Assembly (NCBI GenBank): GCA_002269645.1
Contig: NIVC01000639.1
Location: 1-64,000, forward strand
From: Macrostomum lignano
Lineage: Eukaryota
DNA length: 64,000 nucleotides
Direction: 5' to 3'
The position numbers were made by a program, and so were the translations under genes. The number at the start of each line of letters is the position of its first letter. Position 1 is the first letter of the stretch. The notes under the pieces are model-generated. The model worked only from the letters and a program-made list of their open reading frames with translations. It was not told the DNA's origin and made no database searches. Below are positions 1-49,819 of this stretch, one piece after another.

Positions 1-594
1 CCCTTACATATACATGTACAGTGAAAACATTCTGCGAGAATCTGAAGACCTGCCGGGACTCGTCAGGTCACGTCACAAACTTGAACGACCTGAGATTACA
101 TGATGTAATGCTGGACGACATCAGAAATGGAAACGGAATTTAATAAGTTGCAAGAAATTCTTAAACTGAGTGGTATTGGAAAGTGAAAGATGGGTTTAAG
201 AATAATATACATTAATTTTTGCAAGCCTGAAATTCCTGAAATGGAAAGTCAAGAATTATTTACTGTTAACATGTATATCTACGTATTTTTCTCCCTATTC
301 TGATCACACACTGGTCGGAGTGCTGGACATGTTCATTTAATATCACCAGCTATGCAGAGAAGAATCAATCGCAAACGAGTTCATGGTTTTTGAGGCGCAT
401 CTTGATTGAAGATTGAAGGAAGAAGAGATCGTGGAAGACGGCAGAGAGAGTAACATTTCTGAAGAACCTTCTAATAACTGGGATATACATCCTCATATAC
501 AGATTTATACGTATGCATTACATTGAAGTTTGTACAAATAATTGGTTGCATTTAGATTTCATCAAATGACTTTAATTTTTAGGATATAGGAGTT

Positions 595-617
595 GTGGTT
601 CTGAAAAGGGCCGTTTT
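595..617 (-). promoter_or_regulatory. Degenerate histone-type stem-loop, no histone CDS upstream
   Basis: AAAAC-GGCCCT-TTTC-AGAACC-AC, two stem mismatches. Confidence 0.6.
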
Positions 618-925
618 AACGTTTGTAATGAATGCAAGAAAAGAAATAGGAAGTGACCAAGGAAGCAAATGCAAAAATGGTCATTGTTTCTTACACTGGC
701 AGTGTAAAGTGACTGTCCGCTAGTCGCAAGAATCAGAAAGGGGTAAGTTTTTTTTTAGTTGGTTGGTATAGTATACTACTACAGTACGTTACTAATATTT
801 AATTCTTAAGACCTTTAAATGTATCAGAAAGAGAATTTATTAAGTCGCGAAGGCAACAACGTACAAATGAAAGCTAGAATGATTGTCTAGCAGAATTTTT
901 CAACACGCAGTGGCATCTATTTAGC

Positions 926-946
926 TGCCCTTAAAAGGGCCGTTTT
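926..946 (-). promoter_or_regulatory. Near-intact histone-type stem-loop, no histone CDS upstream
   Basis: AAAAC-GGCCCT-TTTA-AGGGCA, one stem mismatch. Confidence 0.65.
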
Positions 947-1420
947 AACTTTATACTACACTATAGAGTCGGTAGAAATTTCTACACAAATTCTTTTGCA
1001 ACTAGTGGATTGAATTAACAACTGTATTCGAATGCAAGATGTGCGCATTATTGAAATCAAAACTATCACGGTTTAAATTGTCAGAAGTTAGTGTGTATTT
1101 ATTTTAATCGTTACATATATCATACAGTAATCATTCATGTACAGTGATCAACGCTTGATTTGAAAATTTAAAGTTAAATCAATTTTTTTGCTGATCTTAT
1201 TTTTTTAAATTTTGACGATGCTTTAACGAGGATAGAAACGGACGACCGGCCAGTGCATACAACTGCAATAACTACTACCTGCCTGCATACCTTTCTGCTG
1301 ATAGTGATAAGACCCTAATATTCACCATGCACATCCTTAAGACTTAGTTAAAGGTTTAATCGAAGTCTGTATTCTGTACACACAATTACACAAATAGACG
1401 ACTTGGACATCAATAAATTT

Positions 1421-1444
1421 GGTGGCCCTGAAAAGGGCCGTTTT
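1421..1444 (-). promoter_or_regulatory. Replication-dependent histone 3' stem-loop of H4
   Basis: Minus strand AAAAC-GGCCCT-TTTC-AGGGCC-ACC, about 65 nt after the H4 stop. Confidence 0.93.
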
Positions 1445-1492
1445 AGCGTTCAGTAAATGCGCAGCTGAGCTACGATAGCAGCACTAGGGCTA

Positions 1493-1843
<351 letters not shown>

Positions 1844-3458
1844 CTAAGAGATTGTATAGACAGTAGTATGAATGGTCTCAGATTGGGGCAAAGCTTTCGG
1901 CTTTAAGTAAAAATGTACACCCTCTGAGGGGTGGGGTGTCTCCTCGTTGGTCAGAAATTATCGATCGTGAAGTTTTTCTGGGTTGGCGCTGGAAGGGCAG
2001 GAATATATAACCCAAATCCATTTCAAGCCATTCTGGCCAATGCGGGAAAGAATTTTAGTGAGTTTTTACGTTATATGTGCATTAAAGTAGCACCCTAAAA
2101 GTATAGCAATCTTTAAGGCTTCTGTACGAAATTTGCACTGACAGACAATAAAACAAGTGCGCTCTTTGCACTGTCAAATGGGGTTGGTGAAGTTATACTT
2201 AAACCTTCAGTTTTTTGCTCGCGTATTGCTCATGCATGTACTATTGGAAAAAGTGGGCATATCTAGCAGCTGATCGCAATTTACTAGTGTTTGTTCTTTT
2301 TTTTAAAACAAATTGCGTTATTGGGTTCTTAGCTAGGCTGCACTCAGTGAATTATTGAAAAGTTTCAAAAAGTTTGAATTATTGATTAATTAAATGCACT
2401 ACAAAGTAAAACAAGCACAGCATGTATGCAGGTATTAAATTAAAAAGATTCCAATTGAATGCAGCGGTCTCAAAAGGTAATTAATACAATCTTTCAAGGA
2501 CTACTAGAAGTTGTGGGCGGCGGCGGTGAGGAGCCTTTTTGAAAAGGGGCGCCATCATCGCCAGCCACAAAGGTGGAGGGCGACAAGGGCGGTAGCAGCA
2601 ACTGTCGCAGCAGCAATGAAAACGTGTTTGAAATAACGCAGTTATATGCAGTTAAAAAGAATAAACAGTCAACAGTCAACAGTCAAGTTTGCTTTCTGTG
2701 AATTATTTAAATGGCAAAAATTAAGTTACGATTTGTATTTCTTAATATTTCTTTCTCCCGGGGTCTCCTCTCCACTCGCCGGTCAGTTCCCCAGGGGGAG
2801 CATTCCCTAGCTGACAAAGCTATCTATAATTTTGAGGTGGTAGTGAATTAAATTACTACCAACCAAGGAAATAGTTTTGTGCATGCATGTTTATTTACTT
2901 TTATTAAAACTAAGTTAATAACTAAAGTGAACCAATGTATATACTGTAGTAGTAGCAAATAGTTTCATAACTATAGGATGCTATCTGATGATGAACAAGC
3001 TCAGCTATAGTCTTGCAGGCAGTTGTCTCAGCAGGCAGTTGTTGTGCAGGCAGTTGTTGCGCACTAACCAATGAAACCATTAAACCAATTAAAACCAATT
3101 AATTAACCAATGAAATATGTAACACGAAAATGAACCATTTTACATTTTTACATGTACATGAACATGAACAGCAAGACTTTTGATCGCCACCCGACTGCGT
3201 CAGTTTAATTAATGATCTTGATCAGACGTCGAAGTGGGCCGCCGGTTTCAGTTGCTGCAAAAGTGAACGTCTGATTATGAAAGTGATAATTATAATTGGA
3301 ACAGTAAAATTTTCTCTGAAATCACAAATCAAATTTGTATAGGCGCCCATTAAGCGATATGCGACAATTTTAGTTGATTTGAAAAAAATATTACAAGCAA
3401 GCAACGGGGTGGAAAAACCTTGGGGGTTGCATGCTATTTACAGGAACGAGCACTTTAT

Positions 3459-3481
3459 GTGGCCCTCAAAAGGGCCGTTTT
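3459..3481 (-). promoter_or_regulatory. Perfect-stem histone-type stem-loop, no histone CDS upstream
   Basis: AAAAC-GGCCCT-TTTG-AGGGCC-AC. Confidence 0.7.
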
Positions 3482-3986
3482 AGTAAAATATATCATTTCA
3501 GTAGAATTTTTCTGATAAACTGCCACTTCTAATGCACCCTTTCGGTCAGATTCGTGACACAGATTTTAATTCTCTATTTATGAGCATTTGCTGATTTTTT
3601 TTATATTTTAATAAAAATTGTACTTATCCAATTCTGAAAATAAAGAGTAGGGGCAAAGGCAACTAGCCAACTGTTCCTAAGTAATACAAAAAACGTATTG
3701 CAGACAAAATATATACAGAACGTCTCAGTCTTGCTTTTTTAAATTATGAAAATTATTGGTTCTTTTGTTTTGTTGAACTTTGTTATTTTAGACGCAAATC
3801 TAAAAATTCAGTTTGCTTCTGAAAGACGATTTAATATTCGTTTTATTTCTAATTCACATTCACCATTTTCCATTCCTTGAGCACTTATCCATGCAATAAC
3901 ATGAAATGAAAATTAATTGATTAATCAGTTTTTATTGCTTTAATTAGCCTAGTAAGCTCGGCTGACAAGAATTCGTATATTTTAAT

Positions 3987-6900
3987 ATGAAGAATCATTT
4001 TATTATTGCTACTTTTATTTCAATTTCATTGTCTATCTCGATTGGACAATGTGTGAGTATCTTAATTCTAAGGTTTTTACTCGGAAATTAGAATACCAGA
4101 TTTTAGACTAGTATTATTTCTTTCTAACCCTTGTTTCATAATCTAATAATATCTTATAATCTTAAAACCCTGTGTTTTCAAACAGTTAATCAGCTGATGA
4201 AGCTGAAAGTAGATGATGAATTTGTATAGCCATAGGCCTCTATTATGTTTAAAAAGATATCTGACCCTAGACTAAGCAAAAAATGAATTAGGATTTATGT
4301 AACTGGTCGTATATTCCAATCCTTATATCCAACTTTATATAAATTGTAGACATTTTCACCATCAAACACCTGGGCTGTTCTGGTGGACACATCTAGGTTC
4401 TGGTTCAACTATCGGCATGTTGGAAATGTGCTTTCAATCTATCATAGCATCAAAAGACTTGGCATGCCTGATAGGTAAGTTTTAATTAATTATATTTTGT
4501 TTTATTGCCTATATGAAAACTACCAATGTATTAGTTTCCTTCATTAAATTATTTTAACTTTGGATTTTTAACATATATGATCTAAAACAAGTTTTTTAAA
4601 GCATACTTAAGGTCTGCTAATTCACTGCTGCCAGTTATTTAGAAGTAGCCTAGCTAGCTAGCATATATTTCTTAGGATATACATTTTGACTAGGCCTAAT
4701 ATAGTTGGCAAGTATATAGTCATTATAGTGCACTTCCTAATCCTAACTATAGATATATTTCTTTCACTGTCTGTATTTTGTTGATCCAAACAATCCAATT
4801 CAAGAGTACAAGTGAAGACTTGAAATTCTATAGCTAAAATTATACAAATTTTTTAACTCCTTTCTTAGCAAGTTTCTTTGTTGTCAACCTAATCCACAAA
4901 AGTGCTTTGGCAACTTCCTATATTGGATAACCTATTATTATGCTAGGTCACCCAGTATAGGATCCTTGTTCCCAGATCCCAGATTTCTAGCTTTATCATC
5001 AAGATCCCAGATAGTAATAGATCCAAATATTCGGATTCAGAAATATTATTTTCCAAATTTCTAAATGTGCTTCTGAATATGAAAAAATTGAAAAACCAAA
5101 ACAAAACTATGCTAACATAAAAGAAATACAACTTTTGAAAAGAAAGTCAATTAGAAAAATAAGAATGCAAAATTTAATGTAATATTGTTTGTTTTTACAA
5201 TCATCTGTTTTTGTAGTAACATATATTATTAAAAGTGTTAATAAGTAAAGTTATTTAACTTTGGGACCTTTGAGGCATTCAACCTAAAGTCGCAGAAAAC
5301 ATTTAATTGCAGTAATCATTGTTTAAGTTTAATCATCATTTTCTTCAAAATGCAAATGCAACAGACTTTACGGTTCACTATACATGGTAAAGTTATCAAA
5401 TTGCACAAATGTAATGTCAGTTAGTATTAATAATTTGAATTAGTTAGATTAGATATGAAAGAATTGAGTTCAATTCTAAGTTTAATTCAATTCAGATACT
5501 AGATAGATATAGTATAAGCTTGAGATTAGATTGAATCTTGTTAGTAAATTAATGTACAGAATTAATACGTCATACAATTACTAATGCAGATGACGATTAC
5601 ATCAGTAGATGACAAGGCATTTTTGTCATAGAAAGGTGTCAATGTTTACCTTTTACTTTTATCTACTTTCGGAAACACATTTGGATATTTGGATTCGGAT
5701 TAGGAATTTTTTGTACATTCGGATTCAGTTTTGGAACCTTGCAAAAATCTACATTCGGTCTATCACTAATCCCAGATCTCTAGTTTTATCTCCCAGATCC
5801 CAGATCCTTAGCTTCATCACCTAGATCTCAGATCTCTAGCTTCATCACCAGATCCCAGATCTCTAGCTTTATCATCTAGATCCTAGATCTCTAGCTTTAT
5901 CACACAGATCTGAGATTCCTAGCTTTATTACCTAGCTTCCAGATCCCTAGCTTCATCACCCAGATCTCAGATTCCTAACTTCATCACCCAGATCTCAGAT
6001 CCCTAACTTCATCACCCAGATCCCAGTTCCCTTACTTCATCACCCAGATCCCAGTTCCCTAGCTTCACAAAATCCAGAGCTTCACGCCCCAGATCCCTAG
6101 CAGCACCCGCCCCATCCCGCAGCCACATCATCCTGATGATCGCTGACGAGATGGCCTGCAACGCTCGCAACCCTCGCCGGCCACCATCTTCGACAACGCG
6201 GCGGAGAAGACCAACCTGTACGGCGACACCGTGGAAGTCGACTACGGCGGCTACGAGGTCACAGTTGAGAACTTCATCCGGCTGCTCACAGGCCGGCACG
6301 TGCCCGGCACGGCTCCGAGCAAGCGGCTGCTCACCGATGACCAGTCCAACATCCTCATCTACATCACCGGCCATGGCGGCGACGGCTTCGTCAAGTTCCA
6401 GGATAACGAGGAGGTTTCCTCCCAGGTGAGCCGCTTATGGACCCGCCTGTGTTACCAGCTTCCCCTCCTGTGTTACCAGCTCCCCGGCCCGCAGAATCCC
6501 CATAGCAACCAACCAGTCCACTCCAACCGCCGCAGGAGCTCGCCGACGCATTCGAGCAGATGTGGCAGAAGCGGCGCTACCGGGAGATCCTGTTCATTGT
6601 GGACAGCTGCCAGGCCTACTCCATGGCGCTGCCCGTGTACTCGCCCAACATCCTGGCGCTCGGCAGCAGCCGGGTAGGCGAGGACTCGCTGTCTCACCAC
6701 GTGGATCCCAAACTGGGAGTCTACGTGGCCGACCGGTACTCCTACTACCTGCTGCAGTTCCTGGAGAAGGTGGGGCCACCAGCCGGCACACCCTCGCCGA
6801 TTTTCTCGGGGTGTGCCCCTACCACGAGTGCCTGTCCCACGTGACCGCCAAGCTGGACCTGTACAACCGGGACCCCGCCCAGGTGTCCGTGCTGGAGTTC

Positions 6901-12388: not shown

Positions 12389-12825
12389 TCGGTCAGGCGG
12401 CATCCCCAGCCAATCGCAGCGGTCCCCAGCTGCAGCGCCCTGCCCTCTAAATGCGGTTCCCCGGCAGGCCAGCCGCGTCTCCTGTTCGCAGCCCAGCAGA
12501 GACGAAGTGGCAGCCCGCCAGCACCCGCAGAGGAGCAGCTCAGCCCATCGACTCGATACGGCTCAGGATTAGCAGCACGGGAAACCGGTCTGAATAGTCG
12601 ATCGCGGATCAGCAGCTCCGGTGAGGGTCGCCTTGGCAACTCCATTGCACTCCAGGTGTCAATTCTCTCTGGGATTTCAGTGCCAGAGTTGATGGCGTCT
12701 CAGCTAATTCGGGGGGGATTTCAGACTTGAGATGCGGCTTGATGGAGAGGCTTGCGGCCAGGAGTGGAAAGTAGCTCAATACTTGGCTGGTAAGCACAGG
12801 CGGAGTGAAGCTCATCATAAGCAGC

Positions 12826-14740
12826 GGAGTGACACCTCAGCACAGTAAGCAGAGTGACACCCCTCAGCACAGAAAGCAGAGTGACACCTCAGCACAGTAA
12901 GCAAAGTGACACAGTAAGCAGAGTGACACAATCCAGCACAGTAAGCAGAGTGACACACTCCAGCACAGTAAGCAGAGTGACACACTCCAGCACAGTAAGC
13001 AGAGTGACACCCCAGCACAGTAAGCAGAGTGACACCCCAGCACAGTAAGCAGAGTGACACCCCAGCACAGTAAGCAGAGTGACACCCCAGCACAGTAAGC
13101 AGAGTGACACCCCAGCACAGTAAGCAGAGTGACACCCCAGCACAGTAAGCAGAGTGACACTCCAGCACAGTTAGCAGAGTGATACCCCAGCACAGTAAGC
13201 AGAGTGACACTCCAGCACAGTTAGCAGAGTGACACCCCAGCACAGTAAGCAGAGTGACATCCCAGCACAGTAAGCAGAGTGACACCCCAGCACAGTAAGC
13301 AGAGTGACACTCCAGCACAGTAAGCAGAGTGACACCCCAGCACAGTAAGCAAAGTGACACCCCAGCACAGTAAGCAGAGTGACACCCCCCAACCCCCCCC
13401 CCAGCACAGTAAGCAGGGTGACACCCCAGCACAGTAAGCAGGGTGACACCCCAGCACAGTAAACAGGGTGACACCCCAGCACAGTAAACAGGGTGACACC
13501 CCAGCACAGTAAGCAGGGTGACACCCCAGCACAGTAAGCAGGGTGACACCCCAGCACAGTAAGCAGGGTGACACCCCAGCACAGTAAGCAGAGTGACACC
13601 CCCCAGCACAGTAAGCAGAGTGACACCCCCAGCACAGTAAGCAGAGTGACACCCCCGGCACAGTAAGCAGAGTGACACCCCAGCAGAGTAAGCAGGGTGA
13701 CACCCCAGCACAGTAAGCAGGGTGACACCCCAGCACAGTAAGCAGAGTGACACCCCCCAGCACAGTAAGCAGAGTGACACCCCCCAGCACAGTAAGCAGA
13801 GTGACACCCCCCAGCACAGTAAGCAGAGTGACACCCCCAGCACAGTAAGCAGAGTGACACCCCCGGCACAGTAAGCAGAGTGACACCTCAGCACAGTAAG
13901 CAGAGTGACACCCCAGCACAGTAAGCAGAGTGACACTCCAGCACAGTTAGCAGAGTGACACCCCAGCACAGTAAGCAGAGTGACACTCCAGCACAGTTAG
14001 CAGAGTGACACCCCAGCACAGTAAGCAGAGTGACATCCCAGCACAGTAAGCAGAGTGACACCCCAGCACAGTAAGCAGAGTGACACTCCAGCACAGTAAG
14101 CAGAGTGACACCCCAGCACAGTAAGCAAAGTGACACCCAGCACAGTAAGCAGAGTGACACCCCCCAACCCCCCCCCCCCAGCACAGTAAGCAGGGTGACA
14201 CCCCAGCACAGTAAGCAGGGTGACACCCCAGCACAGTAAACAGGGTGACACCCCAGCACAGTAAACAGGGTGACACCCCAGCACAGTAAGCAGGGTGACA
14301 CCCCAGCACAGTAAGCAGGGTGACACCCCAGCACAGTAAGCAGGGTGACACCCCAGCACAGTAAGCAGGGTGACACCCCAGCACAGTAAGCAGAGTGACA
14401 CCCCCCAGCACAGTAAGCAGAGTGACACCCCCCAGCACAGTAAGCAGAGTGACACCCCCGGCACAGTAAGCAGAGTGACACCCCAGCACAGTAAGCAGGG
14501 TGACACCCCAGCACAGTAAGCAGGGTGACACCCCAGCACAGTAAGCAGAGTGACACCCCCCAGCACAGTAAGCAGAGTGACACCCCCCAGCACAGTAAGC
14601 AGAGTGACACCCCCCAGCACAGTAAGCAGAGTGACACCCCCAGCACAGTAAGCAGAGTGACACCCCCGGCACAGTAAGCAGAGTGACACCTCAGCACAGT
14701 AAGCAGAGTGACACCCCAGCACAGTAAGCAGAGTGACACC
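12826..14740. repeat. 24-27-bp minisatellite CAGCACAGTAAGCAGAGTGACACCC with a higher-order duplication
   Basis: Diagnostic variants recur about 776 bp apart (13381 and 14157). Confidence 0.95.
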
Positions 14741-18019: not shown

Positions 18020-18266
18020 TTTTAGAAGGGGGTTGGTCAGATTGGTATGCACAGGCTGGTGATGCTCTGCGGGAAACCCGGAGAATGCCTTCACAATTCC
18101 TTCGACAAATAGGTGCTAAAACATTGGATTCCTTCCGGTATATCCAATTGCCTTTGGAAAACTGAAACCAGTCAACAGCACCAGAGGGTAAAATGTGTTC
18201 AGGCTAGATTGACACATCCGCACACTGCCAGCGCTCCAGCATCCGGGATGCCTCCTCATTCCAGAC

Positions 18267-19591
18267 ATGACCGACGCAGGCGAAGGCGCCAGCCTACTGG
18301 AGGATCTTGTCGACACTTCGCCGGTGCCATCGACAGCGGCGCCCGCGAACGCCGCCAAGGACCCGCTGCACCTGACGGCCTACACGGTGATGGCGGCCAT
18401 CATGGCGGTGGGCCTGGCCGGCAACCTCATCGTGCTGCTCGTGTACGCCAGGAAGAAGGACGGCCACGCCGCCAACGTCTTCATCCTCAGCCTGGCCGTG
18501 TCGGACCTCATCGCCTGCTGCCTGGTCATCCCATGTCCATCGCCATGGAGGTCAACGACTACATGAGCAGCGCGCTGGCCTGCAAGCTGTACTACCTGCT
18601 GAACTGCAGCGGCATCCCCTTCTCGTCCATGCTCATGGCCGCCATCGCGGTTGAGCGCTACTTCTGCATCTGCCGGCCCTTCCTGCGCGCCATCACGGTG
18701 CCGCGCGCCAAGGCCATCGTGCTGAGCCTCGGCGCCGTCGCCTTCTCCCTCGGCCTGGCCATCGCCGTCTTCTGCAGCGTGGTCGTCCGCCGCGTCGACG
18801 GCGACATTGGCAACGGCACAGAGACAGCCGCGTTGGAGTTCGCCGACTACGGCGAGTGTCGCGAGATCAGCGAGCTGAAGCGCAGCCTCGCCAACGAGTC
18901 AGCGGCCACAGCATCGCGGATCACAATCTCAGACGCCAGCCTGGTGTTCTTCAACATCTTCCAGAAGCTGCACCTGTCCCTGTTCGGCGTCTGCATCGCG
19001 CTGGTGTTCGCTCTGTACGTCCGCATCTACCTGTCCGTGCTGCGCCTGCGCCGCAAGAAGCGCGAGCGGCAGCAGAACCGCCAGCAGCTCGAGCGGCTCG
19101 GCACCGTCGCCAACAACGGGGGCGGAGGCGACGCCGGCGCCGAAGAGCCGCGGCCAAGCGGCGGCCGGGCGCAGAGCCGGCGCAAGTCGCTTCGCCTGGT
19201 GGACAGCGACGCGCTGCAGAACCTGAAGACTGCCGCCATGCTGTTCGTGGTGACCATCGTCTTCACGGGCACCTTCATCCCCGCCGCGCTGATGATCGTG
19301 AAAGTGATCGGCTTCAACGTGCTCATCTTCTACCTGTACTACCTGACCCACGCCACCAACCCGCTCATCTACTGCTTCATGAACCGCAACTTTCGCGAGG
19401 ACCTGCGAAAACTTTTCTGCCCTGGAGCCGCCCAACAGCGGCAGCAGCGGGAGCGGCAGCGGCTGCAGGAGCAGCATCAGCAGCGGCAGCAGCAGGTGCA
19501 GCAGCGGCTTCTTCAGACGCCTGAGAACCTCGACACTGCCGAAGAAGAGCGGCAGGAGTGCCGCGAGTGGATTGAGGCCTCCTGCGTGTGA
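18267..19591 (+). CDS. Intronless class A (rhodopsin-like) orphan peptide-type GPCR, one 1-bp deletion near 18531
   Basis: TM1 GLAGN, TM2 LAVSD, TM3 AVERY, TM7 NPLIY. Adding one C in ATC-CC(C)-ATG joins ORFs 18267.. and 18113.. into a 7TM protein. Confidence 0.92.
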
Positions 19592-24789: not shown

Positions 24790-27120
<2,331 letters not shown>

Positions 27121-27429
27121 CCTGCTTGTCTGCTATCGATCTCTGCATTTATTTATCTGAATGTCTATGAGACAATTGTGGCTCCAACCGTGAAGCCACA
27201 GAGCGTACACTACATGCCTGTACACCCTGTCTGAGCGTGTGGCTGCGTACAGAATCCACTTGCGCGCGCACTCAGGGGTCGGCGGAATGGGCATGACTGC
27301 CTGCCTCTTCAGATGGGTCGCAAACAGTACGAGAAGTTAAGCAGAGTAGGTCGCGGTTAGAAAGCAGCTGAACAGGTTTGAACATTGCGTCTTACTAGCG
27401 ACTTTGCCGAGAGCGGCAAACTAAGCTGA

Positions 27430-28221: not shown

Positions 28222-29657
28222 TTTTTTATATCATTGTTTGTCCAGCTTGCAACAGATTTTGTTTTTCATTTAATTATAACATTTCAAAAGATTGTAATTT
28301 GGGAAGCGCTGCATAACATTTCTATTTTTTTGTATTGGTGTGTGCTGTCTTATTTAAAACGGCCGCCATGTGCATGGGGGTGCCATCGTGGGCCCCAGCT
28401 TAGCTGATAAGGGGGGGGGGCATCATTTTTCCTGTCTTTTAGTGGGTCCGCGCCCCCCCCCTTGCCACTCTAGCTGCGCCCACATCAATTCAGTGAAAAT
28501 AATTAGTAGATAATGCTTTTCCAATTTTATTCTACGTACAATAATTGCACATGCCCTGTGCCTAAAATCAGTTAAAATGTCACGGCTGGCTCATTGGTTT
28601 TATTAATCTGTTTTATCAATCTTAGCTGACTCTAACAATGTGTAACAGAAAATTAAAAAAAAAATTCATAAAACCAATGAATCGAGGTGTGCCATGCATT
28701 TTTTTATGATTTTTATGTACAGGGAATTTATGTAGAATAAAAATTAACATAGAATTCCAGTTTTTTGAACAAAGAACTTTATTAGTATCAATAGAGCTAT
28801 AAGAAAGGCACAGCATATCAAAAGATGAACACTGGATCTGCCTCCTATCGAGAGCAATAACAATTTCTGTGCTGAAAAAAATAAAAACTTCCCATCTCCG
28901 TAGTGTACTTTTTCGGAATACCTGAAAATTTTCCAAGAAACGAGGTTTCCCGTCCTTCCTCGAAATGGGAGTTGCGCCTGGGAGTTGCGCCTGCTCCCCT
29001 CGCACATACTTTTCGCTATCTGCCTAACCAGCCACCTTCATCTTTAATTGCTCAATGCCTTCAATGCCTCGGCTCCCATGTACGCCAGCCCCCCGTTCCT
29101 CCCGGCTCTTATCTATCTCTCCTGATAAATGTACGTTCAGCACCCCCGCTTCATATGCAACAAAGTCAATTAATACTTAATTGGCAAATTAGTTTATCTA
29201 GGCTCGCACAAGAGCTCTTTAGCCCCCCCTCGCATTCTCAGTAATTACGAGTACAACCAAACTTCAATTGAGCGTTTTCGTCTGTTCGCCTTCAATAGTG
29301 TATTCAAAAGTCACAACACGTAATATTAGCATGGCTGTGTGTTTTGGCGCACAAGCGGAGAAGAGAGAGAGGGGTGTAGAGCAGAAGTGGAATGGAGGCC
29401 AAAATGTGCATTGAAAGTGTACGCTTATTTTCCGTCGCAAACGTTCAATTAGAAAAATTGGCAAGAGTTCTCTGCCACCACCTCTTGAAGCATACATATG
29501 CCTGCTTGCTAGCTAGATTTTGCAATTACTTGGCTCCAGACACTGATATTATAGCAGACCTGCTACTCGTCAAAACTTACTCGGGCTGAGTCTCAGCCAG
29601 TCAGCCTCATCTTCATTCGAATGTCCGGTGAAGGATAATTTTTTCACAACTGCCTTC

Positions 29658-30218
29658 ATGAACGCTGCCGGTGCCACTGCAGCGACCGCTCACAGACGTC
29701 AGCCAACTGAACAAGAGTTTCTGGTGGCGATTGCCTCTGGCGACATACAGCTCATTCTTCATGCGGTCCGGAAGGGATTCACAACTATTGATCAACTGAC
29801 CGGCTTCACGGATGAGCGCGTTCGTCTGTCACCGCTGCATCTCGCCTGCCTGACTGGGCAGGTAGCAATGGTGGACATCCTGATCAAGGCGCAGGCGGAT
29901 ATCAATGTGGCAATGGACTTGGGCGAGACTCCTCTGTACTTGGCTGCGCAGAGTGGCAGCGGCAAAATTGTGAGACTGCTCGTCAAGGCTCAAGCGGATG
30001 TCAATATTCAAGATGAGGACGGCGACTCCCCACTGCACGCCGCTTCGCAGGAGGGTCACCTGAAAGTCGTCGACTTTCTCATCCAGGCCAGTGCCAACGT
30101 CAATCTAAGTAACAAAAGGGGTATTGAAACGAAAAATTATATTGGTTTTTCCCATATTATAATCGTTTCCTTCTGCCAACAGTTCAGGAAGACAACGAAC
30201 AATGGACCTCGATGGTAA
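29658..30218 (+). CDS. Ankyrin-repeat protein (3 repeats), last 31 codons supplied by an LTR
   Basis: SPLHLAC, GETPLYLAA and GDSPLHAAS motifs; sequence from 30125 is LTR. Confidence 0.85.
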   Translation: MNAAGATAATAHRRQPTEQEFLVAIASGDIQLILHAVRKGFTTIDQLTGFTDERVRLSPLHLACLTGQVAMVDILIKAQADINVAMDLGETPLYLAAQSGSGKIVRLLVKAQADVNIQDEDGDSPLHAASQEGHLKVVDFLIQASANVNLSNKRGIETKNYIGFSHIIIVSFCQQFRKTTNNGPRW

Positions 30219-30577
30219 CTTTCTCTGTGTGATCTCTAGAGTCACATTCTCAAACTTCAGGCGAGGATCTTTCCTCTTCAATCAGTATATTTTATAAGCT
30301 AGCACACTGTACGCGAGCAACGAGGAATAGGAGCAGTAGGGAGAGAGAGTGGGATTTCGAGGCCCAATAGGCAGTGTCGGTCAGAGGTTGTGCATGCATC
30401 ACGCGAGGGTCGCATGGCTGGGCTTCTTGCTCGCCGATCATCAGGACTATTTTTAGGCATGCAGATCTTGTGCATCTGGGGAGTTGCTGCCAAGGCTGGA
30501 TGCTTGTTCACGCATCACGCGCGTGTCGGCTGATTTCTCCCATCCTCTTGCTAACGGCGCCTTCGTTTCACTTCAGT

Positions 30578-30589
30578 CGCTCTTTTTTC
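30578..30589 (-). promoter_or_regulatory. Polypurine tract
   Basis: GAAAAAAGAGCG then AC then TGAAG (start of the 3' LTR). Confidence 0.75.
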
Positions 30590-31216
30590 AGGGAAGCGAG
30601 GCCCTCCGAGCTCTGTTGAAAATAAGCTTGGAGCAATGATGACATGGCGTACAGTTGTGCATTTGCTTGCGATACGCAGTCCCACTTGATAACTTGCAGT
30701 TGAGTTGATTTTGTTGAAACACGAAACTTGGTCAAGGGGCAAAGTGAACTTGTGACAACAGTGGATGAATTGTACCAGCACATCCTCTTGACTATTTAAT
30801 CAGATCTGAGAGGGGGATTGACGTGAACTCGGAAACTCGACAAATTGAATGGGCTTTTCGATGCCCTAAACAGTGACGCAAATAGGACTGGACACGGAGA
30901 CTCGACAAATTGAAACAGCGTCTGGTAGACAGTCAGATCGGGATGCTGGCTGAAGGTACATTGCAGTTAAATATGACGTCGGAAAAATACCGTCTTGACC
31001 AAATTGATTGTGTAGATCTCTCAACGAAAGTTTCTTCTTGGAAGGGTAAACTGCGTCGCTTCTTGATCTTCGTCCATTGGTCTTGTTTAGTTCGAAGTCT
31101 TCCTTTACTGAAGGCAGGAAAGTCTCAGTTCTCGATTCATTTGGATGGCTGTTGAAGACATGCAGCAGAGCGATAACTGCATGGTATCTGAGACTTCTGT
31201 CTAGCGGTGACTCACG

Positions 31217-31230
31217 CGGTCAGGGAACCA
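31217..31230 (-). promoter_or_regulatory. Primer-binding site for tRNA-Glu
   Basis: TGGTTCCCTGACCG, 2 nt after the 5' LTR, complementary to the metazoan tRNA-Glu 3' end ...CGGTCAGGGAACCA. Confidence 0.85.
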
Positions 31231-32194
31231 ATTGAAACGAAAAATTATATTGGTTTTTCCCATATTATAATCGTTTCCTTCTGCCAACAGTTCAGGAAGA
31301 CAACGAACAATGGACCTCGATGGTAACTTTCTCTGTGTGATCTCTAGAGTCACATTCTCAAACTTCAGGCGAGGATCTTTCCTCTTCAATCAGTATATTT
31401 TATAAGCTAGCACACTGTACGCGAGCAACGAGGAATAGGAGCAGTAGGGAGAGAGAGTGGGATTTCGAGGCCCAATAGGCAGTGTCGGTCAGAGGTTGTG
31501 CATGCATCACGCGAGGGTCGCATGGCTGGGCTTCTTGCTCGCCGATCATCAGGACTATTTTTAGGCATGCAGATCTTGTGCATCTGGGGAGTTGCTGCCA
31601 AGGCTGGATGCTTGTTCACGCATCACGCGCGTGTCGGCTGATTTCTCCCATCCTCTTGCTAACGGCGCCTTCGTTTCACTTCAGTACGATAAAATAGTTC
31701 TCAGCTCCAATCTCCGCAGTGTAAAAGTTCCGACAGCTTTTTAGTACGTCCCCACGGAGATTAGATGCGGCAAGCGCGAAAACCAGTGTAAAGCATTATC
31801 TGCAAGCATGGCAGGCGAGCCAGAGGCACACAAAGGAATCTCGGTCACCCCGCGTGAGCATGAGATCACAGAGATCACAGAGGGCAATCAGACACGAATT
31901 CGTGGCTTCTGTCCCAGTTTGACCCCTCGGTCTCCAGCGATGCCTTCGTAACATCCAAGCGTAGTAGGGATTTTTTTCTGGGGAAATCTGTGCTTCTCGG
32001 AATTTGTCACGCTTTTCTCCTTTGAGTAAATCAGCCCGCGCCCGGATCAGTGCGAGCTCAACCGAGTGGAAATTATTGAGCAAAGAGAAATTCGTGCTCT
32101 GAAAAGTCTGATGTAGCTGTGAGATTCTGGATACTTGCAGAACCTGAATGCCACAGTCGCTTAAGCAGTTGCAGTGCAGTGAGTGTCTTAATGG

Positions 32195-33600
32195 TGAAGT
32201 GTCTTGATGGTGAAGTGTCGGGTTAGTGAAGTGTCGGGTTGGTGAAGTGTCGGGTTGGTGAAGTGTCGGGTTGGTGAAGTGTCGGGTTGGTGAAGTGTTG
32301 GGTTGGTGAAGTGTCGGGTTGGTGAAGTGTCGGGTTGGTGAAGTGTCGGGTTGGTGAAGTGTCGGGTTGGTGAAGTGTCGGGTTGGTGAAGTGTCGGGTT
32401 GGTGAAGTGTCGGGTTGGTGAAGTGTCGGGTTGGTGAAGTGTCGGGTTGGTGAAGTGTCGGGTTGGTGAAGTGTCGGGTTGGTGAAGTATTGGGTTGGTG
32501 AAGTGTCGGGTTGGTGAAGTGTCGGGCTGGTGAAGTGTCGGGTTGGTGAAGTGTCGGGTTGGTGAAGTGTCGGGTTGGTGAAGTGTCGGGTTGGTGAAGT
32601 GTCGGGTTGGTGAAGTATCGGGTTGGTGAAGTGTCGGGTTGGTGAAGTGTCGGGTTGGTGAAGTGTCGGGTTGGTGAAGTGTCGGGTTGGTGAAGTGTCG
32701 GGTTGGTGAAGTATCGGGTTGGTGAAGTGTCGGGTTGGTGAAGTGTCGGGTTGGTGAAGTGTCGGGTTGGTGAAGTGTCGGGTTGGTGAAGTGTCGGGTT
32801 GGTGAAGTGTCGGGTTGGTGAAGTGTCGGGTTGGTGAAGTGTCGGGTTGGTGAAGTGTCGGGTTGGTGAAGTGTCGGGTTGGTGAAGTATTGGGTTGGTG
32901 AAGTGTCGGGTTGCTGGAATTTTGGGTTGGTGAAGTGTCGGGTTGGTGAAGTGTCGGGTTGGTAAAGTGTCGGGTTGGTGAAGTGTCGGGTTGGTGAAGT
33001 GTCGGGTTGGTGAAGTGTCGGGTTGGTGAAGTGTCGGGTTGGTGAAGTGTCGGGTTGGTGAAGTGTCGGGTTGGTGAAGTGTCGGGTTGGTGAAGTGTCG
33101 GGTTGGTGAAGTGTCGGGTTGGTGAAGTGTCGGGTTGGTGAAGTGTCGGGTTGGTGAAGTGTCGGGTTGGTGAAGTGTCGGGTTGGTGAAGTGTCGGGTT
33201 GGTGAAGTGTCGGGTTGGTGAAGTGTCGGGTTGGTGAAGTGTCGGGTTGGTGAAGTGTCGGGTTGGTGAAGTGTCGGGTTGGTGAAGTATTGGGTTGGTG
33301 AAGTGTCGGGTTGCTGGAATTTTGGGTTGTGAAGTGTCGGGTTGGTGAAGTATCGGGTTGGTGAAGTGTCGGGTTGGTGAAGTGTCGGGTTGGTGAAGTG
33401 TCGGGTTGGTGAAGTGTCGGGTTGGTGAAGTGTCGGGTTGGTGAAGTGTCGGGTTGGTGAAGTGTCGGGTTGGTGAAGTGTCGGGTTGGTGAAGTGTCGG
33501 GTTGGTGAAGTGTCGGGTTGGTGAAGTGTCGGGTTGGTGAAGTATCGGGTTGGTGAAGTGTCGGGTTGGTGAAGTGTCGTGTTGGTGAAGTGTCGGGCTG
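32195..33600. repeat. 16-bp minisatellite GGTGAAGTGTCGGGTT
   Basis: Seen directly. Confidence 0.96.
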
Positions 33601-34900: not shown

Positions 34901-49122
<14,222 letters not shown>

Positions 49123-49819
49123 GGCGATGGGGCTAGCAGAAAAGTTGCTGTCTCAGCTGTTGCTAGGGGGGATTATCCAGTTAGTCAGTGCCGCGATCCA
49201 TCACCCGCAGCGCTCAGTGCGCGGCCTCTTCAACAGCCGCTGTGGCAGTCGCTGGCTGGGGAGGGGGTGGCAGGTCATCGCTGATTGGCTGAGGGGCTGC
49301 CATCAATAACCAGTCCCGGGGATCGGCAGCTTCCATCCGTACAGCGGCTGACCCGCATGCTACCGTCAGCGAGTGCACTGCTGCTGCTTGGGTGACCAGC
49401 CAGTCCCTCTCCCCGTCTCTGTCACGTTTCTCATCGCTCGCCGCTACACTTTTTACTGTCAGCCGTTGCCGGACCGAGGCGAATGCGGCCAACAATCACT
49501 CAGATTGTTGCTGGGCTCGTGACCTCTCCCAGCATCCCCTATCACTTCCATTATTTTTATCTTCCTAGATTCCATAGCTGGCTTCAGTTGCAACTGGCTC
49601 TGTACTCTCAATAGCAATCATCACTGTCTCCCATCTATAAAGTGCATGGTGTCTTTTTTGACAATATTTCTGTCTGATTTAAAATTCTGATGCAGCAGCA
49701 CTGGGCTGATGCTTATAAACCATTCTGCCAACTGTGTCAGCATCTCATCGGGTAAATACTGAGCATGCTCTGGAAATTCCCATTCAACCGATGAGCAGGT
49801 AGACAAGACACTTCTCCCT

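What the first reader, a model, noticed from the sequence alone, without database searches (positions are those of the whole stretch)
30125..31683. Intact, very recent miniature LTR retroelement primed by tRNA-Glu, with no coding capacity
Seen: two 451-bp direct repeats, identical by eye, with TG...CA ends on the minus strand. AT plus TGGTTCCCTGACCG follows the 5' LTR, a polypurine tract plus AC precedes the 3' LTR, each LTR has a TATAAAA box, and the flanks are GTAT/GTAC. The 657-bp interior has no gag/pol ORF. Established: these are the cis signals of LTR retrotransposition, the PBS matches 14 nt of the tRNA-Glu 3' end, and TRIM/LARD elements borrow enzymes from an autonomous partner. Inference: a currently mobile non-autonomous family, possibly undescribed. 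A 4-bp TSD would point to a Gypsy-type helper.
Basis: partly seen in the sequence, partly recalled or inferred. Interest (0 to 1): 0.8.

Follow-up and report, generated by a model that had tools for sequence, protein, structure and literature searches.

The report
Young non-coding LTR retrotransposon in flatworm
This is a real, very young 1.56-kb LTR retrotransposon copy with no genes of its own in the flatworm Macrostomum lignano, an ordinary kind of parasitic DNA that has to borrow enzymes from a larger element, and its copy number and helper could not be checked here.

Summary
Two 100% identical direct repeats lie at 30123-30577 and 31231-31685. They are 455 bp, and the 451-bp TG...CA LTR sits inside each. 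The element reads on the minus strand. AT plus TGGTTCCCTGACCG follows the 5' LTR. This is the only exact copy in the window and equals the last 14 nt of vertebrate tRNA-Glu-CCA. A 10-nt purine run (GAAAAAAGAG) lies 4 nt before the 3' LTR, and each LTR has TATAAAA. The 657-bp interior has no gag/pol: no Pfam hit, no homolog in 5.8 billion proteins, no Rfam family. It is therefore not a hammerhead retrozyme or a 5S-carrying (Cassandra-type) element.

The host is Macrostomum lignano. About 21% of its genome is LTR retrotransposon, and its published catalogues are RT-based, so they would miss such elements.

It is best read as a TRIM-size non-autonomous LTR retrotransposon, most likely helped by a Ty3/Mdg4 element.

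Not shown: other copies, the helper, current mobility, or novelty against Repbase/Dfam. No M. lignano genome was reachable.

The TSD is only 3 of 4 (GTAT/GTAC). The outer flanks also repeat the unprocessed cDNA dinucleotides, so the mode of integration stays ambiguous.

New member of a known kind; modest interest.

The parts
31233..31683 (-). 5' LTR, 451 bp, TG...CA. TATAAAA lies at 31404..31398.
   Evidence: Identical to the 3' LTR. TATA position.
31231..31232 (-). AT spacer between U5 and the PBS. This is the dinucleotide expected at the unprocessed cDNA end.
   Evidence: direct reading.
31217..31230 (-). Primer binding site TGGTTCCCTGACCG, complementary to the 3'-terminal 14 nt of tRNA-Glu-CCA.
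   Evidence: Only exact match in the window. Identical to the start of the human Glu-TTC-4-1 reverse primer and of the zebrafish GluCUC primer.
30576..31232 (-). Non-coding interior, 657 bp including the spacer, PBS and PPT. It holds a pair of ~26-nt direct repeats at 30824-30849 and 30889-30914.
   Evidence: No Pfam domain. No homolog in 5.8e9 proteins. The 117-codon open frame after the PBS has no relative among 1.84e9 representatives. No Rfam family. Internal repeat.
31090..31117 (-). Leader arm of an inverted repeat that pairs with U5 (31281-31308) and brackets the PBS.
   Evidence: 28 nt, 79% complementary. The 343-nt R-U5-PBS-leader RNA folds with z = -4.1, and 0 of 100 shuffles fold as well.
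31281..31308 (-). U5 arm of the same inverted repeat.
30580..30589 (-). Polypurine tract GAAAAAAGAG, 4 nt (CGAC) upstream of the 3' LTR.
30125..30575 (-). 3' LTR, 451 bp, TG...CA. TATAAAA lies at 30296..30290.
30121..30124 (.). Left flank GTAT, a putative 4-bp target-site duplication copy. Its last two bases (AT) also extend the LTR repeat.
31684..31687 (.). Right flank GTAC, a putative 4-bp target-site duplication copy. Its first two bases (GT, which read AC on the element strand) also extend the LTR repeat.
29628..30122 (+). Host ankyrin-repeat ORF, interrupted or abutted by the insertion after ...NLSNKRG. The element is antisense to it.
   Evidence: Pfam Ank_2, E = 1.3e-35. ORF listing.

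Best explanation
A young, structurally intact copy of a non-autonomous LTR retrotransposon of TRIM size class, in the genome of the flatworm Macrostomum lignano. It lies on the minus strand, antisense to an ankyrin-repeat ORF and at that ORF's 3' edge.

Proposed mechanism; each step is inferred from the anatomy and none was assayed:
1. RNA polymerase II starts about 30 nt downstream of the U3 TATAAAA box in the 5' LTR and ends in the 3' LTR, giving an RNA of about 1.1 kb with no gene.
2. The RNA is packaged by Gag of an autonomous partner.
3. The 3' end of tRNA-Glu anneals to the PBS, which sits inside a U5-leader stem, and primes minus-strand DNA.
4. The purine run before the 3' LTR primes plus-strand DNA.
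5. The resulting cDNA carries two 455-bp LTRs (ACTG...CAAT) and is inserted by the partner's integrase.

All proteins come in trans. The most probable source is one of the Ty3/Mdg4 families that dominate this genome. The copy implies at least one source copy of the same short form elsewhere in the genome.
For: Shown:
- Perfect 455-bp direct repeats with a TG...CA core.
- A PBS exactly 2 nt after the 5' LTR, unique in the window, equal to 14 nt of tRNA-Glu-CCA.
- A purine run 4 nt before the 3' LTR, and a TATA box in each LTR.
- The PBS is bracketed by a 28-nt U5/leader inverted repeat, and the leader RNA folds with z = -4.1.
- No coding capacity by three independent searches.
- No ribozyme or 5S module.
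- The host is M. lignano: a GPCR in the window is 100% identical to a UniRef M. lignano protein.

From papers:
- LTR retrotransposons make up 21% of this genome (PMC5730564).
- 129 of 137 catalogued families are Ty3/Mdg4 (PMC12801592).
- A flatworm precedent exists: ta-TRIM has a ~590-bp non-coding interior, a 4-bp TSD and a helper that shares its PBS (PMC4558846).

Inferred:
- Identical LTRs mean this short form itself went through reverse transcription.
- The complete absence of coding remnants fits an established non-autonomous lineage better than a random deletion.
Against: - No second copy, solo LTR or RT/IN-coding element is present in the 64-kb window.
- Copy number, helper and transcription are all untested.
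- The TSD is imperfect, GTAT versus GTAC.
- The PPT is short (10 nt) and not flush with the LTR.
- There is no canonical AATAAA in the LTR, only AATATA at position 433.
- PBS complementarity was verified only against vertebrate tRNA-Glu. It stops at 14 nt against those sequences.
- The LTRs (451 bp) are longer than in classical TRIMs (100-250 bp).
- Perfect LTR identity could be exaggerated by assembly polishing or gene conversion.
Confidence: 0.6

Rival explanations
1. A one-off deletion derivative. A full-length autonomous element, probably Ty3/Mdg4, lost its whole gag-pol region. This could happen by a template switch during the reverse transcription that made this copy, or by a genomic deletion soon after insertion. 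On this reading there is no propagating non-autonomous family, and the parent family shares the LTR, PBS and both ends of the interior.
For: - Only one copy is visible.
- All cis signals sit at the two ends of the interior, which is what a central deletion would leave.
- The LTR length (451 bp) is typical of autonomous elements rather than of classical TRIMs.
- The genome is full of autonomous LTR families.
Against: - No trace of gag or pol coding sequence remains in 657 bp, so both breakpoints would have to fall in untranslated regions.
- A deletion after insertion would have to occur before any LTR substitution accumulated.
- Remnants shorter than about 30-40 codons would escape these searches, so this argument is weak.
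Confidence: 0.28
2. The same element, but inserted without integrase end-processing. The unprocessed linear cDNA (ACTG...CAAT) was captured at a chromosomal break by end joining, between GGGGT and ACGAT on the plus strand, with no target-site duplication. This concerns the mode of insertion only. It is compatible with either explanation of origin above.
For: - The exact repeat is 455 bp, not 451. Both outer flanks carry the dinucleotides (AC and AT) that lie between the PPT and the LTR and between the LTR and the PBS. Under normal integration this is a 1-in-256 coincidence (own arithmetic).
- The 4-bp 'TSD' has a mismatch although 902 bp of LTR have none.
- Capture of retroelement cDNA at double-strand breaks is an established, rare pathway (own knowledge: Ty1 in yeast, integrase-defective retroviruses).
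Against: - Integrase-independent insertion is orders of magnitude rarer than normal integration.
- On this reading the 3-of-4 flank match is itself a coincidence.
- A single assembly error or substitution in the flank would restore a perfect GTAY TSD.
Confidence: 0.25
3. Not a retroelement at all: a 1.4-copy tandem duplication of an 1108-bp unit, or an assembly artefact, in a window that is 41% tandem arrays.
For: - The window is extraordinarily rich in tandem repeats.
- The M. lignano assemblies are known to be redundant and hard to assemble (PMC5730564).
Against: - A duplication gives no reason for the repeat to begin with TG and end with CA.
- It gives no reason for a unique 14-nt tRNA-Glu complement to sit 2 nt after the first copy, for a purine run to sit just before the second copy, or for a TATA box in each copy.
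- At 1.56 kb the whole structure is shorter than a single long read.
Confidence: 0.03

Closest known systems
ta-TRIM of taeniid tapeworms (Koziol et al. 2015, PMC4558846)
   Same: Both are flatworm hosts. Both have TG...CA LTRs, a tRNA-complementary PBS a few nt after the 5' LTR, and a PPT a few nt before the 3' LTR. Both have a non-coding interior of about 600 bp (590 versus 657) and a 4-bp TSD class, and both depend on a helper presumed to share the PBS.
   Different: The LTRs are 451 bp versus ~198 bp. The PBS is 14 nt to tRNA-Glu versus 9 nt to tRNA-Leu. The spacers differ: 2 nt versus 4 nt for the PBS, and 4 nt versus 3 nt for the PPT. The host is a free-living macrostomid. The ta-TRIM authors found no related sequence in other flatworms. 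Sequence similarity was not tested here because no ta-TRIM sequence was at hand.
Plant TRIM / SMART elements (Witte et al. 2001; Gao et al. 2012), under the TRIM size rule of under 4 kb
   Same: A non-coding LTR-PBS-interior-PPT-LTR element well under 4 kb, dependent on an autonomous partner (definitions quoted).
   Different: Classical TRIMs total 0.5-1 kb with LTRs of 100-250 bp. This one is 1.56 kb with 451-bp LTRs. Plant TRIMs mostly use tRNA-Met (own knowledge).
Plant retrozymes (Cervera et al. 2016, PMC4918200)
   Same: Almost the same dimensions: LTRs of 300-400 bp, a non-coding interior of 300-600 bp, a 4-bp TSD and a Ty3-gypsy helper.
   Different: Retrozymes are defined by a hammerhead ribozyme in each LTR, and no hammerhead was found in these LTRs even at E <= 10. 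Their PBS is tRNA-Met. Metazoan retrozyme-like repeats lack LTRs, PBS and PPT.
Autonomous Ty3/Mdg4 families of M. lignano: Mag, CsRN1, Gmr1/Osvaldo (Ustyantsev et al. 2025, PMC12801592)
   Same: Same host. These are the likely source of Gag, RT and IN. They have TATA-containing LTR promoters.
   Different: They encode gag-pol and this element encodes nothing. There is no canonical heat-shock element in this LTR. Whether any of them shares this LTR end and a tRNA-Glu PBS is unknown.

Membership tests
LTR retrotransposon (structural definition) | Two direct long terminal repeats ending 5'-TG...CA-3' | tested here: met
   451-bp LTRs, 100% identical, with TG...CA ends.
LTR retrotransposon (structural definition) | PBS complementary to a tRNA 3' end (with CCA) just downstream of the 5' LTR | tested here: met
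   TGGTTCCCTGACCG lies 2 nt after the LTR and is unique in the window. It equals 14 nt of human and zebrafish tRNA-Glu-CCA. The M. lignano tRNA-Glu was not available.
LTR retrotransposon (structural definition) | Polypurine tract just upstream of the 3' LTR | tested here: met
   GAAAAAAGAG lies 4 nt upstream. It is short and carries weak statistical weight on its own.
LTR retrotransposon (structural definition) | Perfect target-site duplication of 4-6 bp | tested here: inconclusive
   GTAT versus GTAC, 3 of 4, with a chance probability of 0.05. No 5- or 6-bp alternative exists.
LTR retrotransposon (structural definition) | Promoter and polyadenylation signals inside the LTR | tested here: inconclusive
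   TATAAAA at position 280. There is no AATAAA or ATTAAA, only AATATA at positions 285 and 433. No RNA data.
TRIM / non-autonomous LTR element | No gag, pol or other protein-coding capacity | tested here: met
   Pfam: nothing. Six-frame segments against 5.8e9 proteins: nothing. The 117-codon frame against 1.84e9 representatives: nothing.
TRIM / non-autonomous LTR element | Size under 4 kb; classical TRIMs are 0.5-1 kb with LTRs of 100-250 bp | tested here: inconclusive
   At 1559 bp it meets the under-4-kb rule. The 451-bp LTRs and the total length exceed the classical range.
TRIM / non-autonomous LTR element | Multiple dispersed copies mobilised in trans by an autonomous element that shares the LTR termini and PBS | not testable with these tools
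   No other copy in the window. M. lignano contigs are not in the reachable collections.
ta-TRIM (taeniid cestodes) | ~198-bp LTRs and a 9-nt tRNA-Leu PBS 4 nt from the LTR | tested here: not met
   451-bp LTRs and a 14-nt tRNA-Glu PBS 2 nt from the LTR.
Retrozyme | Hammerhead ribozyme in each LTR | tested here: not met
   An Rfam scan at E <= 10 finds no hammerhead inside the element. The single Hammerhead_II hit (E = 2.8) lies outside it at 29970-30050.
Cassandra-type TRIM | 5S rRNA-derived module in the LTR | tested here: not met
   No 5S or other Rfam match in the LTRs.
LARD | Non-autonomous LTR element longer than 4 kb | tested here: not met
   1559 bp.
Autonomous Ty3/Mdg4, Ty1/Copia or Bel/Pao element | gag and pol (PR, RT, RNase H, IN) reading frames between the LTRs | tested here: not met
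   The interior is 657 bp with no domain or homolog.

The most novel reading that the evidence does not exclude
This copy belongs to an undescribed non-autonomous LTR family that is still mobile in Macrostomum lignano and is primed by tRNA-Glu. It would be the first TRIM-like family in a free-living flatworm. It would be polymorphic between laboratory lines and mobilised by one identifiable Ty3/Mdg4 family. This particular copy may also have been captured with unprocessed cDNA ends, that is, without integrase.
Probability: 0.3. Interest if true: 0.45.

Novelty: new member of a known kind. Interest (0 to 1): 0.3.

Why it matters
If a family stands behind this copy, M. lignano would gain a compact and evidently recently active retroelement of 1.56 kb with known cis signals. 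M. lignano is a transgenic regeneration model with stem cells, a piRNA pathway and a genome that is 21% LTR retrotransposon.

Such an element would be useful in three ways:
- as a marker of ongoing retrotransposition between laboratory lines;
- as a handle for identifying which autonomous family is active;
- as a test case for how flatworm stem cells silence non-coding retroelements, as was done for ta-TRIM in Echinococcus.

It would also show that the RT-first catalogues of this genome miss a class of elements. It does not change what is known about how LTR elements work.

Tried and rejected
1. Other copies in the window: blastn with word size 7 for the LTR and the interior found only the element itself.
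2. tRNA genes in the window, to get the host tRNA-Glu: none.
3. Other copies or transcripts through called ORFs: all 28 stop-to-stop segments of at least 30 aa from six frames, joined into one query, against 5.8e9 proteins. No hit at E <= 0.01.
4. M. lignano contigs through the GPCR protein P0001: not on record.
5. The full ankyrin protein, to see how it continues past the insertion: no protein at E <= 1e-25. This used the last of the three capped protein searches for nothing.
6. Exact-pattern scans for the U5-PBS junction, the LTR 5' end and the PBS plus leader, in metagenome, viral and prokaryotic genome collections: 0 hits each. This was expected, because these collections hold no flatworm genomes, so it says nothing about copy number.
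7. Consensus sequences in the supplements of PMC12801592: none are held as text.
8. The Wasik et al. 2015 genome paper, under the PMC id I recalled for it: no paper is held under that id.
9. Retrozyme and Cassandra readings: rejected by the Rfam scan.
10. Heat-shock-element LTR, as in four M. lignano families: no canonical three-unit HSE, only one TTCCTGAA downstream of the TATA box.
11. A further ankyrin exon downstream, to decide between an exon and an intron insertion: none found by motif search in the window.
12. Structure of the whole interior RNA: not more stable than shuffles, z = +0.28.
Full report
**What is in the sequence**

The direct repeat is real. The repeat finder reports two 100% identical copies 1108 bp apart. 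Exact extension gives 455 bp, at 30123-30577 and 31231-31685, with no mismatch.

The element reads 5'->3' on the minus strand and is 1559 bp from TG to CA. In order it contains:
- the 5' LTR;
- an AT spacer;
- TGGTTCCCTGACCG (31230..31217);
- a 657-bp interior ending in GAAAAAAGAG-CGAC;
- the 3' LTR.

Each LTR has TATAAAA at position 280-286. The only poly(A)-like hexamer downstream of it is AATATA at position 433.

**Are the retroelement signals more than chance?**

A perfect 455-bp repeat cannot be chance. The 14-mer after the 5' LTR is the only exact occurrence in 64 kb. Even with 2 mismatches only 0.35 hits are expected.

It is identical to the first 14 nt of a published reverse primer for human tRNA-Glu-TTC-4-1, which includes CCA (TGGTTCCCTGACCGGGAATCGAACCC; PMC12217144). 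It also matches the first 14 nt of a zebrafish tRNA-Glu-CUC primer (TGGTTCCCTGACCGG; PMC11417395). After position 14 the element diverges from the vertebrate tRNA (C versus G). The tRNA-Glu of the host could not be obtained: there is no tRNA gene in the window.

The purine run is short at 10 nt and carries little statistical weight on its own. Its position is right.

The 343-nt stretch from the presumed start of R through U5, the PBS and the leader folds much better than shuffles (z = -4.1; 0 of 100 shuffles fold as well). The reason is a 28-nt inverted repeat, 79% complementary, between U5 (31281-31308) and the leader (31090-31117), which brackets the PBS. A U5-leader stem around the PBS is a known feature of retroviral RNAs (own knowledge). 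Here it is a prediction from one sequence, with no covariation test. The interior as a whole is not unusually structured (z = +0.28).

**No coding capacity**

The longest sense-strand ATG ORF in the interior is 71 aa, and a GTG-start ORF in another frame reaches 76 aa. Three searches were run:
- Nine ORFs or open frames went through Pfam at E <= 1. Only the control, the neighbouring ankyrin ORF, matched.
- All 28 stop-to-stop segments of at least 30 aa from all six frames were joined and searched against 5.8 billion proteins, with no hit at E <= 0.01.
- The 117-codon open frame directly after the PBS, where gag would start, was run with phmmer against 1.84 billion representatives, with no hit.

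Remnants shorter than about 30 codons would escape all three.

An Rfam scan at E <= 10 finds no family inside the element. So there is no hammerhead ribozyme, which rules out a retrozyme despite very similar dimensions. There is also no 5S module, which rules out the Cassandra type.

**Host and context**

A rhodopsin-type GPCR ORF at 18113-19591 is 100% identical to a UniRef protein of Macrostomum lignano. The window is therefore from this free-living flatworm.

The window is 41% tandem arrays, about 45 of them, each with its own unit. This fits the published description of the genome: 21% LTR retrotransposons and 15% simple and tandem repeats (PMC5730564).

The element is inserted antisense to an ankyrin-repeat ORF (29628-30122; Pfam Ank_2, E = 1.3e-35), directly after ...NLSNKRG. 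Before insertion the frame would have read ...KRG-T-I-K-stop. Alternatively the exon would have ended at a G|GTAYGA donor; this is inference from reading the sequence. Now the frame runs 31 codons into the LTR. No further ankyrin exon was found downstream, and no near-identical protein exists in the database. Whether a functional gene was hit is open.

**The flanks**

The plus-strand flanks are GTAT and GTAC, which is 3 of 4 (P = 0.05 by chance). No 5- or 6-bp duplication exists.

That is why the exact repeat is 455 bp and not 451 bp. These dinucleotides are the ends of the unprocessed linear cDNA, and integrase normally removes them (established retroviral and Ty3 biology). There are two readings:
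- The target was ATAC on the element strand, a 1-in-256 coincidence with both dinucleotides, and one flank base then changed or was mis-assembled while 902 bp of LTR stayed perfect.
- The unprocessed cDNA was joined into a break between GGGGT and ACGAT without any duplication.

My rough likelihood comparison makes the two comparable once the rarity of integrase-independent insertion is counted, so I leave it open. It does not affect what the element is.

**Age**

There are zero differences in 451 bp. This gives a 95% upper bound of 0.33-3.3 million generations for mutation rates of 1e-8 to 1e-9 per site per generation. The M. lignano rate is unknown. Polishing or gene conversion could hide a difference. 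'Very recent' is fair. 'Currently mobile' is not shown.

**What it most likely is**

It is most likely a non-autonomous LTR retrotransposon of TRIM size class, copied through a short non-coding RNA with tRNA-Glu priming and proteins supplied in trans.

The helper is most probably a Ty3/Mdg4 element, simply because 129 of the 137 catalogued M. lignano families are (Mag 78, Gmr1/Osvaldo 40, CsRN1 9, Mdg3 2; PMC12801592). The TSD length adds little.

The main rival is a one-off deletion derivative of an autonomous element. The total lack of coding remnants argues mildly against it.

A plain tandem duplication or an assembly artefact does not explain the TG/CA ends, the PBS, the PPT and the TATA box, all in the right places.

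**Comparison with what is known**

The closest described system is ta-TRIM of taeniid tapeworms (PMC4558846):
- ~198-bp LTRs;
- a ~590-bp non-coding interior;
- a 9-nt tRNA-Leu PBS 4 nt from the LTR;
- a 4-bp TSD;
- a candidate helper, 'lennie', with the same PBS and LTR ends.

The present element works the same way on paper. It is not a member, because its PBS tRNA and LTR length differ.

Published M. lignano LTR catalogues start from the RT domain (DARTS), or used LTRharvest with a minimum TSD of 5 and discarded unclassified elements. An element like this one would be missed or dropped. No held paper combines Macrostomum with non-autonomous LTR elements. Repbase and Dfam could not be searched, so 'undescribed' remains likely but unproven.

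**Limits**

No M. lignano genome sequence beyond this window was reachable. The following are therefore untested: copy number, solo LTRs, the helper element, the host tRNA-Glu, the empty site and transcription. The decisive steps are listed separately.

**Verdict**

This is a correct and careful observation of an ordinary kind of element: a new member of a known kind, of modest interest.

Noticed in passing
window 1-64000, e.g. 24986-27132, 12823-14740, 32192-33597, 39585-40787: 41% of the window lies in about 45 different micro- and minisatellite arrays. Each has its own unit (4-75 bp) and they recur every 1-1.5 kb. One 16-mer array of 88 copies starts 500 bp from the element.
   Followed up: partly
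window 1398-1843 (-): A histone H4 gene (1493-1843) with an Rfam histone 3' stem-loop (1398-1444; 37.7 bits, E = 2e-7). It lies in a 31-40% GC stretch (1-6000) that contrasts with the ~50% GC of the rest of the window.
   Followed up: partly
window 18113-19591 (+): A single-exon rhodopsin-type GPCR ORF with ERY and NPLIY motifs, 100% identical to a UniRef Macrostomum lignano protein. This identifies the organism. Its nearest named relatives are neuropeptide FF/orexin-type receptors of other flatworms, at about 35% identity.
   Followed up: yes
window 6147-6841 (+): Open frames that look like exons of a GPI-anchor transamidase (PIGK/GPI8-like, ...ILIYITGHGGDGFVKFQD...). Judged by eye only.
   Followed up: no
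window 43526-43801 (-), 48709-49152 (-): Two further open frames that look like fragments of seven-transmembrane receptors. Judged by eye only.
   Followed up: no
window 29628-30218 (+): An ankyrin-repeat ORF (Pfam Ank_2, E = 1.3e-35) ends in the middle of a repeat exactly at the insertion site. It has no near-identical protein in the 5.8-billion-protein collection, so it may be unannotated, a pseudogene, or truncated by the insertion.
   Followed up: partly
window 31496-31520 / 31612-31636 (5' LTR) and 30388-30412 / 30504-30528 (3' LTR): U3 contains an imperfect 25-nt direct repeat (84% identity, CGCGTGATGC-type motif) about 115 bp apart. It may be a duplicated promoter or enhancer module.
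   Followed up: no
window 30824-30849 / 30889-30914: The interior holds two copies of a ~26-nt motif (TTCAATTTGTCGAGT.TCCG...) at 88% identity, 65 bp apart. Function unknown; it is a candidate for a packaging or protein-binding signal.
   Followed up: no
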